Virus record (IMG/VR): IMGVR_UViG_3300032242_003291
Coordinates: 124,001-188,000 of that record
Reading direction: 5' to 3' (one strand)
Length of the DNA stretch: 64,000 bases
Below, one piece after another: positions 7,766 to 13,864 of this stretch (the stretch's first letter is position 1; the number at the start of each line of letters is the position of its first letter). The position numbers were made by a program, and so were the translations under genes. The notes beneath the pieces were generated by a model. It was not told the origin of the DNA, ran no database searches, and saw nothing but the letters and a program-made list of their open reading frames with translations.

Positions 7766-8230
7766 TTATTTCAAGAATCTTAATTTATATAAGGTTGAAA
7801 AGATTAACTCTTGAACTCCGTCGATTTGATTTTGAATATAAGATTCTTTGACAGCCTTTCTGTTTTTTTCTATATTATCATCCAAATCTTTGAAATAACT
7901 TATTAACTGTTCAGTTGATTTATAATCAACCATTTTAACCGTTTTATATCCTGTAATCAAGTCATGTTTTCCTTGATAACTTTCAACAATACCATCGATT
8001 AACTCAACAATTTCATCATAGTAAGTTCCTAAAGCCATGTGTTCTGCAAACGATGATTGAGATTTTGTTTGCCAATGAAAAATATGGGCCTGACTTCTTG
8101 AATGAAGTAATGTAGCAATCATATCAACAACATCCGCTGTTTCAGTTGTTTCTTCTTCTTTTTTTTCAGCCTCGTTCAAGTGCATCACTTTGAACAACTG
8201 CTCCTTTGTTAATGTTAATTTTTTTTCCAT
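7766..8230 (-). CDS. Ferritin/Dps-like four-helix-bundle protein (phage DUF5856-like)
   Basis: LHSRSQAHIFHWQT, EHMALGTYYDEI…DGIVESYQG, TLYKLRFL; start corrected to 8230. Confidence 0.7.
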   Translation of the reverse strand: MEKKLTLTKEQLFKVMHLNEAEKKEEETTETADVVDMIATLLHSRSQAHIFHWQTKSQSSFAEHMALGTYYDEIVELIDGIVESYQGKHDLITGYKTVKMVDYKSTEQLISYFKDLDDNIEKNRKAVKESYIQNQIDGVQELIFSTLYKLRFLK

Positions 8231-8249
8231 ACATATAAATATATGGACT

Positions 8250-8324
8250 TGGGTGAATAACGGAAATCGTACCCGTGACAACTAAAACCACAATCTAGTG
8301 CTCTACCAACTGAGATATATTCCA
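8250..8324 (-). pseudogene. Degenerate tRNA-His(GUG)
   Basis: Cloverleaf with GTG anticodon, but mismatched pairs 1-72 and 2-71, no G-1, D-stem mismatch, T-loop TACGATT. Confidence 0.7.
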
Positions 8325-8330
8325 ATTTTG

Positions 8331-8402
8331 TGTGACTAGGGAGAATCGAACTCCCACAGAAAGTGCCACAAACTTTCGCCCTACCATTAGGCTATAGCCA
8401 CC
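8331..8402 (-). tRNA. tRNA-His(GUG)
   Basis: G-1 then GTGGCTA/TAGTCAC acceptor, anticodon loop TT-GTG-GC, T-loop TTCGATT; discriminator reads A. Confidence 0.9.
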
Positions 8403-8408
8403 GTGTTG

Positions 8409-8481
8409 AGGTCTTATTAGGATTTGAACCCAAATCTCTTCGTCCGTAGCGAAGCGTACTCATCCATTATACTATAAGACC
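8409..8481 (-). tRNA. tRNA-Arg(ACG)
   Basis: CTTCG-CTACGGA-CGAAG anticodon arm, full cloverleaf. Confidence 0.95.
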
Positions 8482-8485
8482 ATTG

Positions 8486-8556
8486 TTATCCGACCTGGAT
8501 TCGAACCAGAAATGACAGAACCAAAAACTGTAGTGTTACCGTTACACTATCGGACA
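8486..8556 (-). tRNA. tRNA-Gln(UUG)
   Basis: TGTCCGA/TCGGATA acceptor, loop TT-TTG-GT, T-loop TTCGAAT. Confidence 0.93.
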
Positions 8557-8561
8557 ATGTG

Positions 8562-8635
8562 TGGACCCTCACGGGCTCGAACCGTGGACCTAATGATTAT
8601 GAGTCATTTGCTCTAACCTGCTGAGCTAAGGGTCC
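8562..8635 (-). tRNA. tRNA with CAU anticodon, probably Ile2 (lysidine, reads AUA)
   Basis: CT-CAT-AA loop; C4-G69 and C5-G68 pairs typical of TilS substrates; no initiator GGG/CCC stem. Confidence 0.85.
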
Positions 8636-8643
8636 TAAATGGG

Positions 8644-8725
8644 TGGGAGCAACAGGACTCGAACCTGTGAACTCGAAAGAGGGAAGATTTACAGTCTTCT
8701 GCCATTGCCACTAGGCGATGCTCCC
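8644..8725 (-). tRNA. tRNA-Tyr(GUA)
   Basis: CT-GTA-AA loop, long variable arm. Confidence 0.95.
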
Positions 8726-8730
8726 AAAAA

Positions 8731-8858
8731 CAGGAAAGGAGAAGATGGTTCAGTGGACATCTCCTTTTATGATTGGCATTACTTATGGTAGTTTAAACTC
8801 CGACGATGTCTTATTCCAACCACTACCAGGTTTTTACATCATCATTCCCCAATCAACC
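8731..8858 (-). ncRNA. Candidate structured ncRNA between tRNA-Trp and tRNA-Tyr
   Basis: Stems TGATTGG/CCAATCA and TGGTAGT/ACTACCA, crossing GATGATGT/ACATCGTC, 3' hairpin AAAGGAGA/TCTCCTTT. Confidence 0.6.
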
Positions 8859-8863
8859 TTTAG

Positions 8864-8936
8864 CACGCATGTCAGGACTCGAACCTGAAACTCCTAGTTT
8901 TGGAGACTAGTACTCTACCAATTGAGCTACACACGC
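8864..8936 (-). tRNA. tRNA-Trp(CCA)
   Basis: CTAGT-CTCCAAA-ACTAG anticodon arm. Confidence 0.95.
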
Positions 8937-8944
8937 ATTCTTTG

Positions 8945-9016
8945 AGGTCAGTACAGGATTTGAACCTGTGTAAATAGTTTTGCAGACTATCGCCTAAGCC
9001 ACTCGGCCAACTGACC
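8945..9016 (-). tRNA. tRNA-Cys(GCA)
   Basis: ATAGT-CTGCAAA-ACTAT anticodon arm, U73. Confidence 0.95.
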
Positions 9017-9202
9017 ATTTAATGTTTTTTTCTCCTTATATTTTTTACACCTTTTTTTAGGTATTTCAACATAATAGGAACCAAAGACAGAAGTAAAAAC
9101 TCCAACGTAATTCATACCTTTCTCTCTGACATCCTGTAATACCGTACCCTCATAAAGGTGGGGAAAAATATCTATACTGTCTTTTTTTACTACTACTTTC
9201 AT
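8987..9202 (-). CDS. Hypothetical protein (3' end runs into tRNA-Cys)
   Basis: 71-aa ORF with A-rich start context. Confidence 0.5.
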   Translation of the reverse strand: MKVVVKKDSIDIFPHLYEGTVLQDVREKGMNYVGVFTSVFGSYYVEIPKKRCKKYKEKKTLNGQLAEWLRR

Positions 9203-9212
9203 TTTTTTATTT

Positions 9213-9419
9213 TTAATGTGTTCCGTCTACTAATGAAATACCATGTCTCAAACCTGTAATGAAATCTTCAATGTCTTGTTTTTTCTTGAAGTGTTGACCT
9301 ACAACAACTCCAACTTCATTTCCAAAATCACTTATATCACCATAATAACCAATATCTTCTGAACGAGCTACTAATAATTTTCCCGTTTCTTCAACTAAAT
9401 TTTGTATTATTTTTTCCAT
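9213..9419 (-). CDS. Hypothetical protein
   Basis: ORF; start corrected to MEKII. Confidence 0.55.
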   Translation of the reverse strand: MEKIIQNLVEETGKLLVARSEDIGYYGDISDFGNEVGVVVGQHFKKKQDIEDFITGLRHGISLVDGTH

Positions 9420-9426
9420 ATTTTTT

Positions 9427-9660
9427 TCATTTAACCATATCAAAGTTAAGATTATTATCTGACATTAACTCACGAAGTTCATCCCTTATTTCTTGATAAG
9501 CATCATACTTATCCTGTGGTAAATCATCGGACGCATATTTGGTCTTAGCCCTCAAAGATTGGTCCAATTCCCATAATACACTCCAAAATTTAAGACCCTT
9601 TGTTGCCAATTCAAACTCCTGATTATCGTCAGGTAAATTAAATTCAAGTATCGCTCTCAT
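9427..9660 (-). CDS. Hypothetical phage protein (M-x-AILEFNLPDD family)
   Basis: ORF; start corrected to MRAILEF because the longer frame overlaps tRNA-Phe. Confidence 0.7.
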   Translation of the reverse strand: MRAILEFNLPDDNQEFELATKGLKFWSVLWELDQSLRAKTKYASDDLPQDKYDAYQEIRDELRELMSDNNLNFDMVK

Positions 9661-10948: not shown

Positions 10949-11398
10949 TTATTTTTTTATTTTTTTTCTCCCCCTCCATGTAGGAGTTAATGAATGACAA
11001 TTAGGACAAAGAACTTTTAAGTTAGTAATATCATTATTTTTATTATTACCGTCCATATGGTCAACTTCCATACTAATTGGTTTACCCATCCATTCTGTTA
11101 TACCGCATTCTTCACATTTGTTTCCTCTTTCTTCTTTAACCCATTTTTTGATACTCCATATATGTGCAGTTTCATAATTTCGTTTTTTTCTAAATGTTTC
11201 CCTTGATTTAGTTATTTTTTCTGGATTAGAGTTATGACTATAATCACAATTTAACCACCATTCAGATTTAAGAACACCTTCACTAATTTTTTTCTTTATA
11301 TCTTCCGTTCTTATTCTTGAATTAGCACAAGATTTAGAACAAAATTTACCACTACCAAAAGAACCATCATGTTCTTTTTCGCATTTTAAGCATTTCAT
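10949..11398 (-). CDS. Free-standing HNH endonuclease with N-terminal Cys-rich zinc finger
   Basis: CLKC…FCSKSC N-terminus; CEECG…EVDHMDGNNKNNDITNLKVLCPNCH HNH motif. Confidence 0.9.
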   Translation of the reverse strand: MKCLKCEKEHDGSFGSGKFCSKSCANSRIRTEDIKKKISEGVLKSEWWLNCDYSHNSNPEKITKSRETFRKKRNYETAHIWSIKKWVKEERGNKCEECGITEWMGKPISMEVDHMDGNNKNNDITNLKVLCPNCHSLTPTWRGRKKIKK

Positions 11399-12307: not shown

Positions 12308-12934
12308 TTACTCAAAATCTTCTTTCCATGAATCCTTATGATAGTTGAATAACTTAAAATCCTTTTCCAATTTTTCATAAACATAATCAGCAATTTCTTG
12401 GTCATAGTATGTTTTCCAACTAGGTCTATCAGATTTGAATTTATTAACTTTAATAAACTTGTTGAAGGATTCAGTTAATATATCCATATTGTCTCTAATT
12501 ATTGATAATGATTTCAAATCAGATTCTAAATGTTCGTATCTAATATAATATTTTGGTGCCATCGGCATTGCTTTTAGTGCATCGTGACATCTTGTATGCC
12601 AATAATTTTTGTTTGGTTTACCCTGAAATGAATCGCTTGTTGGATTATTAATTGGGTCTGAAAAAACAAATTCCAACCATTCTCTGTAATTCAAATCTTT
12701 TGTATGATGAACTTCAAAAAAATGCCAGTGTGAATGTAATGACGTAAGTCTTGAATATGGATTTCTTATGTTTACATATAAATCATAGTCATCTTTTCCT
12801 TTTTCACGTGGCATTGCAATCTCATGTAAATGAGATTCTGAAAAATTTAACAACTTCATCAATTCAAATGTGGCCCTTGATGCAGTTCTTTCAGGTATTA
12901 ACCATATTACTTTGTATTTGTCTGAATAATTCAT
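12308..12934 (-). CDS. Sulfotransferase-family-like protein
   Basis: IPERTASRA, VNIRNPYSRLTS, IRYEHLESDL, YEKLEKDFKLFNY motifs. Confidence 0.65.
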   Translation of the reverse strand: MNYSDKYKVIWLIPERTASRATFELMKLLNFSESHLHEIAMPREKGKDDYDLYVNIRNPYSRLTSLHSHWHFFEVHHTKDLNYREWLEFVFSDPINNPTSDSFQGKPNKNYWHTRCHDALKAMPMAPKYYIRYEHLESDLKSLSIIRDNMDILTESFNKFIKVNKFKSDRPSWKTYYDQEIADYVYEKLEKDFKLFNYHKDSWKEDFE

Positions 12935-13281
12935 TAATCTTCAATTTTTAGTGTTCTTATCATCCATTGAGGTCTTTGGTTTGTTGCAACATTGTTGACC
13001 CATTCTTTTGCAGATGGTATATAATTATTACAATCTTCCTTAACGTGTTGTTCACCAACATATCTAGTATATACTACCTTACCATCAGAATTTTTGAATT
13101 CTGAACCAAATCTTTTTTCCATCTCAAAAATTCCTTCACTATGATGTCTAAACATTCTGTGTAAAGAATCACCAAACCAACCTTTGGTTTCATCCAACCA
13201 TTCGTGTAAATGAATATAGTCTTCAGGTTTTCCACCAAATTTTTTGGCAGATGATTTTGCGTGTACGTTAGGATGTGCCAT
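12934..13281 (-). CDS. DUF6915-like protein
   Basis: MAHPNVHAKSSAKKFGG…HRMFRHHSEG…GEQHVKED pattern. Confidence 0.7.
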   Translation of the reverse strand: MAHPNVHAKSSAKKFGGKPEDYIHLHEWLDETKGWFGDSLHRMFRHHSEGIFEMEKRFGSEFKNSDGKVVYTRYVGEQHVKEDCNNYIPSAKEWVNNVATNQRPQWMIRTLKIED

Positions 13282-13864
13282 TCTTCCAAGAATCTTTATT
13301 GTAGTTTAATAATATAAAATCTTCCTTCAAATAATCATAAACAAATTGGGCTAATTCATCAGTATAAAATGATTGCCAACTTCTTGGGTCAATACTTTTA
13401 TATGAATTATGACGTATGTGGTTATTAAAAATATATTCTAATTCATCATTAAAATTTTCTTTAATGAACCATAAGTTATTTAAGTCTTCCTCTAACGATT
13501 CAAATCTAACAAAATAATTGGGCATTTTATTCTTAAACGCCTTAACTAAAGAAATATACATTTGTGTTGGTAGAACGTATAAATCATCCATTTCAATGGG
13601 TATTTTTTTTCTAACCCATATTTCAAAGGGGACCTTTTTATCAATTATTTTTGTTTCAATCGAAAAGTTATATATAGAAACTAAACGAGAATAGGGATTT
13701 CTAACATTAGCTGTTAGATAGTAATCCATATACTCAGTGTTATCTATGAACTTATGTTGATTGGAATCGGAAAAATTAAAATATTCCACTATTGGTCTAC
13801 AAGAACGAGTTGCCGCTCTCATTGGTAAAAACCAAAATATTTTTAATTTTTTAGAATATGGCAT
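13268..13864 (-). CDS. Sulfotransferase-family-like protein, paralog of 12308..12934
   Basis: LPMRAATRS, NVRNPYSRLVS, VRFESLEEDL motifs. Confidence 0.65.
   Translation of the reverse strand: MPYSKKLKIFWFLPMRAATRSCRPIVEYFNFSDSNQHKFIDNTEYMDYYLTANVRNPYSRLVSIYNFSIETKIIDKKVPFEIWVRKKIPIEMDDLYVLPTQMYISLVKAFKNKMPNYFVRFESLEEDLNNLWFIKENFNDELEYIFNNHIRHNSYKSIDPRSWQSFYTDELAQFVYDYLKEDFILLNYNKDSWKNGTS

What the first reader, a model, noticed from the sequence alone, without database searches (positions are those of the whole stretch)
8731..8858. Pseudoknotted ~125-nt RNA between tRNA-Trp and tRNA-Tyr
Seen: P1 TGATTGG/CCAATCA encloses P2 TGGTAGT/ACTACCA, crossed by an 8-bp GATGATGT/ACATCGTC helix, followed by a hairpin AAAGGAGA/TCTCCTTT. 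GACATC can alternatively pair with GATGTC in that hairpin, suggesting two conformations. Flanking tRNA processing would release it as a discrete RNA. Known: T4 tRNA clusters carry stable non-tRNA species of unclear function. I cannot assign a family.
Basis: partly seen in the sequence, partly recalled or inferred. Interest (0 to 1): 0.6.

Follow-up and report, generated by a model that had tools for sequence, protein, structure and literature searches.

The report
New double-pseudoknot RNA in phage tRNA arrays
The 136 bases between tRNA-Trp and tRNA-Tyr encode a real, conserved, intricately folded small RNA, found in over a hundred uncultured freshwater phages, that matches no catalogued RNA family and has no known function.

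Summary

- **Not visible from one sequence.** The single-sequence fold is unremarkable (z = -0.59).
- **Covariation.** At least 119 related IMG/VR phage contigs carry homologues. Across 76 distinct sequences 97-98% of pairs are kept, with abundant compensatory changes in every helix, both crossing helices included.
- **New tertiary helix.** The 3' hairpin loop pairs with the linker after the 8-bp helix. One pair switches G-C/U-G in 69 of 72 sequences. The RNA is therefore a compact double pseudoknot.
- **Strand and coding.** G-U pairs (122, against 1 A-C) fix the strand. No reading frame is conserved.
- **No known family.** There is no Rfam match. It is not homologous to T4 rnaC/rnaD and does not have the topology of an HDV-like (theta) ribozyme.
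- **Context.** It sits like a gene in tRNA arrays, usually just upstream of tRNA-Tyr. Lake metatranscriptome contigs contain it.

My best reading is a stand-alone small RNA cut out by the tRNA-processing enzymes. Its function is open: a partner-binding RNA, a ribozyme, a sensor or a nuclease block.

The parts
8727..8862 (-). Whole element: the 136-nt spacer between tRNA-Trp and tRNA-Tyr. RNA position i corresponds to window coordinate 8863-i.
   Evidence: CM R1 scores 160.5 bits here, and this is the only copy in the 317-kb genome.
8849..8855 (-). P1, 5' strand (UGAUUGG)
   Evidence: 100% paired in 76 sequences. One pair covaries: GC 65, AU 9.
8770..8776 (-). P1, 3' strand (CCAAUCA)
8836..8843 (-).
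   Evidence: All 8 pairs change on both sides, with up to 6 pair types, and 97.7% are paired.
8802..8809 (-). P2, 3' strand (ACAUCGUC)
8822..8828 (-). It crosses the helix called P2 here.
   Evidence: Found at the same place in nearly all members of the subtypes that have a crossing helix, with many compensatory versions. In the 9-bp subtype it is 100% paired and 8 of 9 pairs covary.
8786..8792 (-). PK1, 3' strand (ACUACCA)
8795..8798 (-). PK2, 5' strand (GUUU, within the conserved linker GGAGUUU)
   Evidence: Found by mutual information. Pair counts: GC 70; UA 63 / GC 4; UA 56 / UG 12; GC 38 / UG 31.
8748..8751 (-). PK2, 3' strand (GAAC, inside the P4 loop)
   Evidence: An Illumina adapter abuts 8748 in one deep RNA-library contig.
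8760..8767 (-).
   Evidence: Three pairs covary, for example GC 43 / CG 17 / UA 10 / AU 6.
8743..8759 (-). P4 loop, 17 nt (UGUCCACUGAACCAUCU). GUCCAC and CCAUCU are invariant in the homologue set that was collected without using these motifs.
8735..8742 (-). P4, 3' strand (UCUCCUUU)
8857..8859 (-). Putative P0, 5' strand (AGG). It could pair with CCU at 8732-8734 and close a three-way junction with P1 and P4.
   Evidence: Both sides are nearly invariant, so there is no covariation test. This is inference.
8732..8734 (-). Putative P0, 3' strand (CCU)
   Evidence: CCU follows P4 in every downstream junction listed; the CM alignment holds two CCG exceptions (L004, L139).
8863..8936 (-). Upstream neighbour: tRNA-Trp (CCA anticodon), with no encoded CCA end
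8640..8726 (-). Downstream neighbour: tRNA-Tyr (GUA anticodon). It starts 8 nt after P4.

Best explanation
Window 8727-8862 (minus strand) is a gene for a structured non-coding RNA of about 125-140 nt. The family is absent from Rfam and is carried by uncultured freshwater phages inside their tRNA gene arrays.

**Fold (shown by covariation).** P1 closes a core in which the P2(-P3) hairpin presents a loop strand. That strand pairs with a downstream strand to form PK1. A 3' hairpin, P4, follows, and four nucleotides of its conserved 17-nt loop pair with the linker GGAGUUK to form PK2. The result is one compact double-pseudoknotted domain with about 35 conserved unpaired nucleotides.

**How it most likely works (inferred).**
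- It is transcribed with the tRNAs.
- It is set free by the enzymes that process them: RNase P cutting at the 5' end of the next tRNA, 7-10 nt after P4, and 3'-end processing of the previous tRNA, usually 2-3 nt before the conserved AGGU.
- It then acts as a separate small RNA whose conserved surface (the P4 loop and the junctions) binds a partner, which may be a protein, another RNA or a small molecule.

What it does after release is not known.
For: **Real and structured**
- Covariation in all helices on 76 distinct sequences, and on a structure-blind alignment that includes both pseudoknots.
- PK2 was found independently by mutual information.

**Strand**
- 122 G-U pairs against 1 A-C in the helices. 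Every copy whose neighbourhood holds tRNA genes lies on their strand.

**Not coding**
- No frame is open in more than 30 of 76 sequences, and the lengths (125-144 nt) are not multiples of three.

**Behaves as an independent gene in the array**
- It is spaced like a tRNA on both sides.
- It occurs with different neighbours: upstream Trp, Asn, Lys, Val, Pro or a protein gene; downstream Tyr, Thr, Met, Val or nothing.
- It is present as tandem copies in some phages.
- It lies at either edge of arrays.
- It is absent from three complete related jumbo phages, at least one of which (G001) still has tRNA-Tyr.

**Present in RNA libraries**
- Contigs from four lake or freshwater metatranscriptome runs, from different studies, cover 8732-8861 or homologues of it. 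Two nearby coding stretches (9051-9174 and 8400-8554) are uncovered.

**Phage-specific**
- At least 119 IMG/VR contigs carry it, against one 2.7-kb MAG contig among 185,579 prokaryote species.
Against: - No transcript ends, abundance or stability were measured. The RNA-library evidence consists of assembled contigs, which may include DNA carry-over or unprocessed precursors.
- No partner was found. The phyletic profile across five jumbo phages gave 14 ORFs, none RNA-related. The genome encodes no Ro60, CCA-adding enzyme, QueC, FolE or TGT.
- tRNA-Tyr follows in 55 of 82 contexts. This could instead mean a cis role for that tRNA.
- One deep contig suggests an RNA end inside the P4 loop, which would fit cleavage or trimming rather than an intact free RNA.
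- The invariance of AGGUUGAUU and GUCCAC..CCAUCUUC in loci L075-L153 was imposed by my search pattern. Only the homologues first found by blast in the protein-neighbour loci (20 sequences aligned) test it without that bias.
Confidence: 0.6

Rival explanations
1. It is a self-cleaving ribozyme, or another RNA-processing element, that helps to cut the polycistronic tRNA precursor. This would resemble the HDV-like theta ribozymes that sit next to phage tRNAs.
For: - Complex pseudoknotted fold with many invariant unpaired nucleotides.
- It directly abuts tRNAs.
- The genome encodes no CCA-adding enzyme of its own.
- Precedent: 1753 theta ribozymes lie with their cleavage site at the 3' end of phage tRNAs (PMC10879173).
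- Lead: in run X15, a contig of depth 726 from a close homologue has the Illumina read-1 adapter abutting window 8748. That is C115, the last nucleotide of PK2 inside the P4 loop. A contig with the loop intact has depth 46.
Against: - There is no match to any Rfam ribozyme model, even at E up to 10.
- The order of helix strands is that of P1 enclosing P2/P3 and PK1, followed by P4 with PK2. The HDV order (P1, P2, P3, P1, P1.1, P4, P2) is different.
- The distance from the upstream tRNA to the conserved core varies from 0 to 9 nt, so a fixed cut at the tRNA 3' end is not obvious.
- The adapter junction rests on one assembled contig in one run. It could equally mark exonuclease trimming or a priming bias.
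Confidence: 0.15
2. It is a cis-acting leader of the downstream tRNA, mainly tRNA-Tyr. It would control or protect that tRNA's maturation, for example by blocking exonucleases or by presenting the RNase P site.
For: - tRNA-Tyr follows in 55 of 82 contexts, while the upstream neighbour changes among Trp, Asn, Val, Pro and Lys.
- The distance from P4 to tRNA position +1 is held at 7-10 nt.
- The knotted fold (PK1 plus PK2) is the kind of structure that stalls exonucleases. This comparison with exonuclease-resistant viral RNAs is from my own knowledge and is an inference.
- The RNA end at the edge of PK2 would fit 3'-to-5' trimming that stops at the knot.
Against: - Copies exist with no downstream tRNA, or with a distant one (L004, L139, L082, L080, L085, L074).
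- Other tRNAs follow it in some arrays: Thr, Met, Val, Asn, Trp.
- The related jumbo phage G001 has tRNA-Tyr preceded by tRNA-Val at 6 nt, without the element.
- A recombination boundary lies exactly between the element and tRNA-Tyr when the window is compared with L002.
- The 82 contexts are not phylogenetically independent.
Confidence: 0.12
3. It is a ligand-sensing, riboswitch-like RNA, possibly sensing a 7-deazapurine (preQ0/preQ1-type) compound.
For: - Pseudoknotted aptamer-like fold with a conserved pocket-like set of junction nucleotides.
- In L082 the element lies between folE (GTP cyclohydrolase I, E = 1e-51) and a DUF2061 gene, with no tRNA nearby.
- In L127 it follows queC (E = 5e-37).
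- The commonest neighbours, Tyr and Asn, are queuosine-modified tRNAs (my own knowledge).
Against: - There is no match to the preQ1-I, -II or -III models or to any other riboswitch model.
- No conserved alternative structure or expression platform exists.
- P4 always forms and is not terminator-like in the scan.
- The window's own complete genome has no queC, folE or TGT gene.
- Only 2 of the 13 or so copies examined outside tRNA arrays have such neighbours.
Confidence: 0.06
4. It is a chance fold, a degenerate tRNA, or a protein-coding stretch on the opposite strand (the 56-aa ORF at 8718-8888 on the plus strand).
For: - The single-sequence fold energy is unremarkable.
- An ORF with an upstream AAGGAG overlaps the element on the plus strand.
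Against: - Covariation is far above the controls.
- ARAGORN and the Rfam tRNA model find nothing in the spacer.
- No frame is open across the family, and indels are not in threes.
- The G-U pattern fixes the minus strand.
Confidence: 0.01

Closest known systems
T4 rnaC (species 1, 139 nt) and rnaD (species 2, 119 nt), the stable RNAs of the T4 tRNA cluster
   Same: They are non-tRNA RNAs of about 120-140 nt. They are encoded on the tRNA strand, a few bases from a tRNA gene (rnaD lies next to tRNA-Arg), are co-transcribed with the cluster, and still have no known function.
   Different: There is no homology: CM R1 run with filters off scores at most 10 bits anywhere in the T4 tRNA region. rnaC carries a tRNA-like T arm (GGGUUCGAAUCCC) and folds as nested helices. 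The present RNA has no tRNA-like arm and has two pseudoknots.
Theta (minimal HDV-like) ribozymes next to phage tRNAs (PMC10879173)
   Same: They are small pseudoknotted RNAs that abut phage tRNA genes on the same strand. They show that phages place catalytic RNAs in tRNA arrays to process tRNAs.
   Different: Theta ribozymes are roughly half the size. They sit 3' of the tRNA, with their cleavage site at the tRNA end, and they have the HDV helix order. The present RNA has a different helix order and matches no Rfam ribozyme family, HDV-type ones included. Its spacing is held more tightly on its 3' side. Those ribozymes came from gut phages; this RNA comes from freshwater phages.
GOLLD and ROOL large ornate RNAs (PMC12286853)
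   Same: They are phage or prophage RNAs of unknown function, multi-pseudoknotted, and often encoded near tRNA islands.
   Different: They are much longer (many GOLLD RNAs exceed 800 nt) and form homo-oligomeric cages. They are Rfam families, and neither matches here.
Pseudoknot riboswitches such as preQ1-II and preQ1-III
   Same: The architecture is a pseudoknot plus a downstream hairpin. Two copies lie next to 7-deazaguanine pathway genes.
   Different: There is no model match and no expression platform. The usual downstream feature is a tRNA, not an mRNA.

Membership tests
Any Rfam 15 family (4227 models) | Score at or above the family's gathering threshold | tested here: not met
   Only tRNAs pass the threshold in the window. 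In 8600-9000 at E up to 10, only chance-level hits of 13-15 bits touch the spacer (FTX_1, snoR35).
tRNA | Cloverleaf with T arm, D arm and anticodon arm | tested here: not met
   ARAGORN and the Rfam tRNA model find nothing in 8727-8862. The covariation-supported fold is not a cloverleaf.
HDV-like / theta ribozyme | Nested double pseudoknot with strand order P1, P2, P3, P3', P1', P1.1, P4, P2', and the cleavage site at the first nucleotide of P1 | tested here: not met
   The supported strand order is P1, P2, P3, PK1, P3', P2', PK2, PK1', P1', P4, PK2', P4'. No Rfam ribozyme model, HDV-type ones included, matches.
HDV-like / theta ribozyme | Self-scission in vitro | not testable with these tools
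   The only lead is an adapter junction at C115 in one contig.
T4 rnaC/rnaD | Sequence or structure homology to the T4 species 1 and 2 RNAs | tested here: not met
   CM R1 with filters off scores at most 10.2 bits on the T4 region, and those hits do not lie on rnaC or rnaD. The folds differ.
Riboswitch | A conserved aptamer coupled to an alternative structure (expression platform) | tested here: not met
   The proposed alternative pairing is at chance level. The P4 stem covaries as a constant helix and is not terminator-like.
Riboswitch | Specific ligand binding | not testable with these tools
   There is only a context hint, from 2 copies next to folE and queC.
Stand-alone small RNA excised from a tRNA precursor | Same strand as the flanking tRNAs and the same spacing as a tRNA gene | tested here: met
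   The upstream gap is mostly 2-3 nt, and the downstream gap is 7-10 nt.
Stand-alone small RNA excised from a tRNA precursor | A discrete stable transcript with defined ends | tested here: inconclusive
   It is present in contigs from four metatranscriptome runs. Contigs cannot show transcript ends.

The most novel reading that the evidence does not exclude
The RNA is a new class of catalytic RNA that phages place in tRNA arrays. It would be a self-cleaving or otherwise processing ribozyme, unrelated in fold to HDV-like theta ribozymes, that cuts within its own P4 loop (after C115) or at its borders to mature the neighbouring tRNAs.
Probability: 0.12. Interest if true: 0.9.

Novelty: categorically new. 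Interest (0 to 1): 0.68.

Why it matters
Complex-folded RNAs with two pseudoknots and dozens of invariant unpaired nucleotides are rare. In the past they have mostly turned out to be ribozymes, riboswitches or the cores of RNA-protein machines.

- **A well-supported new class.** There are 76 distinct sequences, and every helix covaries. The class is confined to phages and always sits among their tRNA genes.
- **An old puzzle becomes testable.** Why phage tRNA clusters carry extra stable RNAs has been open since the T4 species 1 and 2 RNAs, and more recently for GOLLD and ROOL. This RNA offers a small, testable case.
- **A recent theme.** Phages manage their own tRNA supply and processing, as seen with theta ribozymes and with tRNAs that evade host nucleases.
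- **If it is catalytic or ligand-binding**, it would add a new fold to those short lists.

One caveat on novelty. An IMG/VR-wide catalogue of 8,495 unnamed candidate RNAs exists (PMC10690425) and may already list this motif. I could not check its supplement.

Tried and rejected
- **Single-sequence folding**. It was uninformative, with z = -0.59 and -0.15. Its MFE register for the hairpin (GGAGAUG/CAUCUUC plus 5' AAAGG/CCUUU) is contradicted by covariation.
- **Cultured phages.** blastn against GenBank phages with three subtype queries found no match.
- **Closest relative, L002.** It is 99% identical across the element, so it gives no covariation.
It is at chance level.
- **Coding on either strand.** Rejected.
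- **P4 as an intrinsic terminator.** It is not flagged by the scan, and most 3' tails read CCUAAA. Only L004, L005 and L139, at the end of an array, have CCGCUUUUUU.
- **T4 rnaC/rnaD homology.** None.
- **HDV topology.** It does not fit.
- **Protein partner by phyletic profile.** I compared G000 and G003, which have the RNA, with the near-complete or complete relatives G001, G002 and G004, which lack it. Absence was checked by nhmmer and motif search. The comparison gave 14 ORFs: GDP-mannose dehydratase, a nitroreductase, a non-specific endonuclease, an HTH protein and several unknowns. None is telling, and five genomes are too few.
- **DUF2061 as a partner.** It is adjacent in L082 but present in G002 and absent from G003, so it was rejected.
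- **Queuosine link.** The window's own genome lacks queC, folE and TGT.
- **Ro60/Y-RNA idea.** There is no TROVE gene.
- **Literature.** The searches found no description of this motif. The supplement of PMC10690425 is not held.
- **Divergent subtype 'a'.** Its P4 loop reads GCACCCAUCU, and it often lies upstream of tRNA-Thr. It keeps P1, P4 and probably PK2, but its core could not be modelled with confidence. It may use a GNRA-capped hairpin in place of PK1.

Full report
**Where the finding lies.** The window is bases 124001-188000 of a 317,259-base IMG/VR virus record rated 100% complete. Its G+C content is about 32%. ARAGORN finds 19 tRNA genes in the window, 18 of them on the minus strand, and Rfam adds one more. 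Read on the minus strand, the order around the finding is:
- tRNA-Cys (9016-8944)
- tRNA-Trp (8936-8863)
- a 136-nt spacer (8862-8727)
- tRNA-Tyr (8726-8640)
- then Met, Gln, Arg and His, each a few bases apart.

The finding is that spacer.

**Checking the observation.**
- The 8-bp helix contains a U-G pair that would be an A-C mismatch on the plus strand.
- Taken alone, the sequence does not fold better than shuffles (z = -0.59). The minimum-energy fold also puts the 3' hairpin in a register that later proved wrong.
- Rfam has no family for it. This holds at gathering thresholds and at E up to 10 on a 401-nt slice.

**Finding relatives.**
- GenBank phages hold nothing similar (and with other subtypes).
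- One IMG/VR contig (L002) has the element at 99% identity. It lies inside a block of about 750 bp (window 8727-9450) that is 99-100% identical, while the flanks are 70-89% identical. The block ends exactly at the first base of tRNA-Tyr. This is a recombination mosaic, and it carries no covariation information.
- A search with the neighbouring DUF5856 protein (7766-8281) brought 70 related loci.
- blastn, and extraction of the Trp-to-Tyr spacers, found homologues at 76-99% identity in about 30 of them. Some phages carry two tandem copies.
- The same pattern found a single 2.7-kb contig, from a Sphingobacteriaceae MAG, among one genome each of 185,579 prokaryote species.
- A covariance model (R1) collected 100 matches, 76 of them distinct.
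- Caveat: in loci L075-L153 the two pattern motifs are invariant by construction. The homologues found through the protein-neighbour search (20 sequences aligned) show the same invariance without that bias.

**Structure.**
- *CM-based alignment.* 97.9% of cells are standard pairs, against 82.1% in shuffles. The covariation score is 0.438 against 0.145 (0 of 500 shuffles reach it), and the slid controls give 0.04-0.09.
- *Per helix.* Every pair of the 8-bp helix (P2 here) changes on both sides. Three pairs of the 3' hairpin (P4) and one pair of P1 do so as well.
Examples are UGGUAGU/ACUACCA, UGUUGGU/ACCAACA, UGAUGAU/AUCAUCA, GUGAAUACU/GGUAUUCAC, GUGUAUUUC/GAAAUACAC and CUAAUGGUC/GAUCAUUAG.
- *A second tertiary helix, PK2.* A mutual-information scan picked out one pair outside these helices: the seventh base of the conserved linker GGAGUUK and one base of the P4 loop. 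It reads G-C in 38 sequences and U-G in 31, with 3 exceptions. With its three neighbours it forms a 4-bp helix that is 94.5% paired.
- *Structure-blind test.* I aligned 29 distinct members of one length class with MAFFT alone and wrote in all six helices, using separate brackets for the two pseudoknots.
  - 98.1% of cells are paired.
  - 21 pairs change on both sides, against 14.0 +/- 1.4 in shuffles (0/500).
  - The slid controls reach at most 0.113.
  - PK1 is 100% paired and 8 of its 9 pairs covary.
  - A small helix P3 inside P2 also covaries.
- *The window's own subtype.* Here P3 would be only ACC/GGU and cannot be tested.
- *P0.* A 3-bp pairing of the invariant 5' AGG with the 3' CCU would close a three-way junction with P1 and P4. 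It is possible but untestable, because neither side varies.
- *Strand.* The helices hold 122 G-U pairs and 1 A-C pair, so the fold belongs to the tRNA strand.
- *Coding.* No reading frame is open in more than 30 of the 76 sequences, and the lengths run from 125 to 144 nt. It is not coding.

The complementarity between the 3' strand of P2 and the start of the P4 loop is no better than in shuffles: mean run 4.69 against 4.12, median p 0.49. P4 behaves as a constant helix. I find no conserved switch.

**Context.**
- Every copy whose neighbourhood holds tRNA genes is on their strand.
- The nearest downstream tRNA is Tyr in 55 of 82 non-identical contexts. Thr follows in 6 (mostly a divergent subtype), Met in 4 and Val in 3.
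- The nearest upstream tRNA is Trp in 45, Asn in 9, Lys in 4 and Val in 4. There is none within 1.5 kb in 11.
- P4 ends 7-10 nt before the next tRNA. The previous tRNA ends 0-9 nt, mostly 2-3 nt, before the conserved AGGU. That is the ordinary spacing between tRNA genes in these arrays.
- Copies occur at the 5' edge of arrays, at the 3' edge (L004, L139, followed by a U run), and outside arrays. The last group includes L082, between folE and a DUF2061 gene, and L127, after queC.
- Three related jumbo phages, 98-100% complete, lack the element altogether. At least one of them, G001, still has tRNA-Tyr.
- The element therefore behaves as a separate gene that travels with tRNA arrays, with a preference for the position just before tRNA-Tyr. 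It is not an obligatory part of that tRNA.

**Expression.**
- Six lake or freshwater metatranscriptome runs from six studies share words with the region. I laid four of them.
- All four have contigs over the element or close homologues. One 1334-nt contig has a single difference over 8732-8861. Another carries a tandem copy.
- Two nearby coding stretches, 9051-9174 and 8400-8554, are uncovered in all four.
- These are contigs, so they show presence in RNA libraries and not transcript ends. DNA carry-over cannot be excluded.
- One observation deserves follow-up. A contig of depth 726 from a close homologue has the read-1 adapter joined directly to window 8748. That is C115, the last base of PK2 within the P4 loop. 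A contig with the loop intact has depth 46.
- This could mean cleavage in the loop, exonuclease trimming that stops at the knot, or a library artefact.

**Comparison with what is known.**
- *T4 rnaC and rnaD.* They lie after tRNA-Arg and are the classical analogy. The model finds nothing in the T4 region, and rnaC is tRNA-like. It is an analogy only.
- *Theta ribozymes.* These minimal HDV-like ribozymes sit at the 3' end of gut-phage tRNAs (PMC10879173). They are the nearest functional precedent, but the helix order here is different and no Rfam ribozyme model, HDV-type ones included, matches.
- *GOLLD and ROOL.* They share the habit of lying near phage tRNA islands and the unknown function (PMC12286853). 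They are much larger: many GOLLD RNAs exceed 800 nt.
- *Candidate catalogue.* A screen of IMG/VR listed 8,495 unnamed candidate RNAs of 29-151 nt (PMC10690425). This motif may be among them, but the supplement is not held.

**Search for a partner.**
- The profile 'present in G000 and G003, absent from G001, G002 and G004' gave 14 ORFs with no RNA-related function.
- DUF2061 does not co-occur with the element.
- The genome encodes no Ro60, CCA-adding enzyme, QueC, FolE or TGT.

**Verdict.**
This is a bona fide structured RNA gene of a family that I could not find described. It has a double-pseudoknot fold.
- The most likely mode of action is as a small RNA excised from the tRNA precursor that works through its conserved loop and junction surface (confidence about 0.6 for that package).
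- A ribozyme or processing role (0.15), a cis role for the downstream tRNA (0.12) and ligand sensing (0.06) remain open.
- What is shown: the fold, the strand, the distribution, the array context and presence in RNA libraries.
- What is inferred: excision by RNase P and the 3'-end processing enzymes, and action in trans.

Noticed in passing
window 8727-9450 compared with L002 2800-3531: A block of about 750 bp is 99-100% identical to another phage whose flanks are only 70-89% identical. The block holds two small ORFs, tRNA-Cys, tRNA-Trp and the element. It ends exactly at the first base of tRNA-Tyr, which points to a recent recombination or gene-conversion tract.
   Followed up: partly
L041:1263-1407, L029:1273-1412, L123:8941-9085 (minus), L124:4517-4664 and others: A second conserved non-tRNA element of about 140-148 nt lies in the tRNA arrays of relatives, between Glu and Val, Val and Phe, Glu and Ala, or Arg and Pro. 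It has a covarying closing helix (AAGAUGAUGG/CCAUCAUC against AAGAACAACG/CGUUGUUC) and an invariant GGAGCGAGAYGGGUACUCC hairpin. It has no Rfam match. I did not see it in the window's own array, but I did not search the window for it.
   Followed up: partly
L023:2733-2853 and L023:3436-3515 (and homologues): Some spacers in these tRNA arrays are tiny ORFs. The 121-nt Cys-to-Trp spacer encodes a conserved 39-aa lysine-rich peptide. The 80-86-nt Gln-to-Arg spacer encodes a hydrophobic peptide of about 21-25 aa.
   Followed up: no
L075:2142-2222, L078:6183-6263 (Arg-to-His spacers, 81 nt): This spacer looks like a tRNA-like gene, with a T arm (GGGUUCGAAACCC-like) and a CUCAUAA anticodon-like loop. 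ARAGORN and the Rfam gathering threshold both miss it.
   Followed up: no
window 8255-8322 (minus): Rfam calls a weak tRNA here (36.6 bits) that ARAGORN does not report.
   Followed up: no
window 10949-11398 (minus); L108:797-1369 (minus): Homing-type endonuclease genes lie inside the tRNA regions. The window has an HNH gene. In L108 a GIY-YIG/NUMOD3 gene lies directly upstream of two tandem copies of the element. They may drive the mosaicism of these arrays.
   Followed up: partly
L082:4756-5750; L127:3856-5074: Two copies of the element lie next to 7-deazaguanine or folate pathway genes: folE-element-DUF2061 in L082, and queC, a 62-aa ORF, the element and tRNA-Thr in L127. The window's own genome has none of these genes.
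   Followed up: partly
window 8748 (run X15, contig record 4): An Illumina read-1 adapter is joined directly to position 8748, inside the P4 loop at the edge of PK2. The contig has depth 726 and comes from a metatranscriptome. This may mark a predominant RNA end.
   Followed up: partly
L023:2929-3192, and L024, L025, L029, L035, L078, L102, L141; L108:393-652: Several phages carry tandem pairs of the element. In most of them the first copy is the divergent subtype 'a' and the second is the window's subtype.
   Followed up: partly
window 12308-13864 (minus): Two paralogous sulfotransferase-like genes (weak Pfam Sulfotransfer_2 matches) flank a DUF6915 gene between the two tRNA sub-clusters.
   Followed up: no
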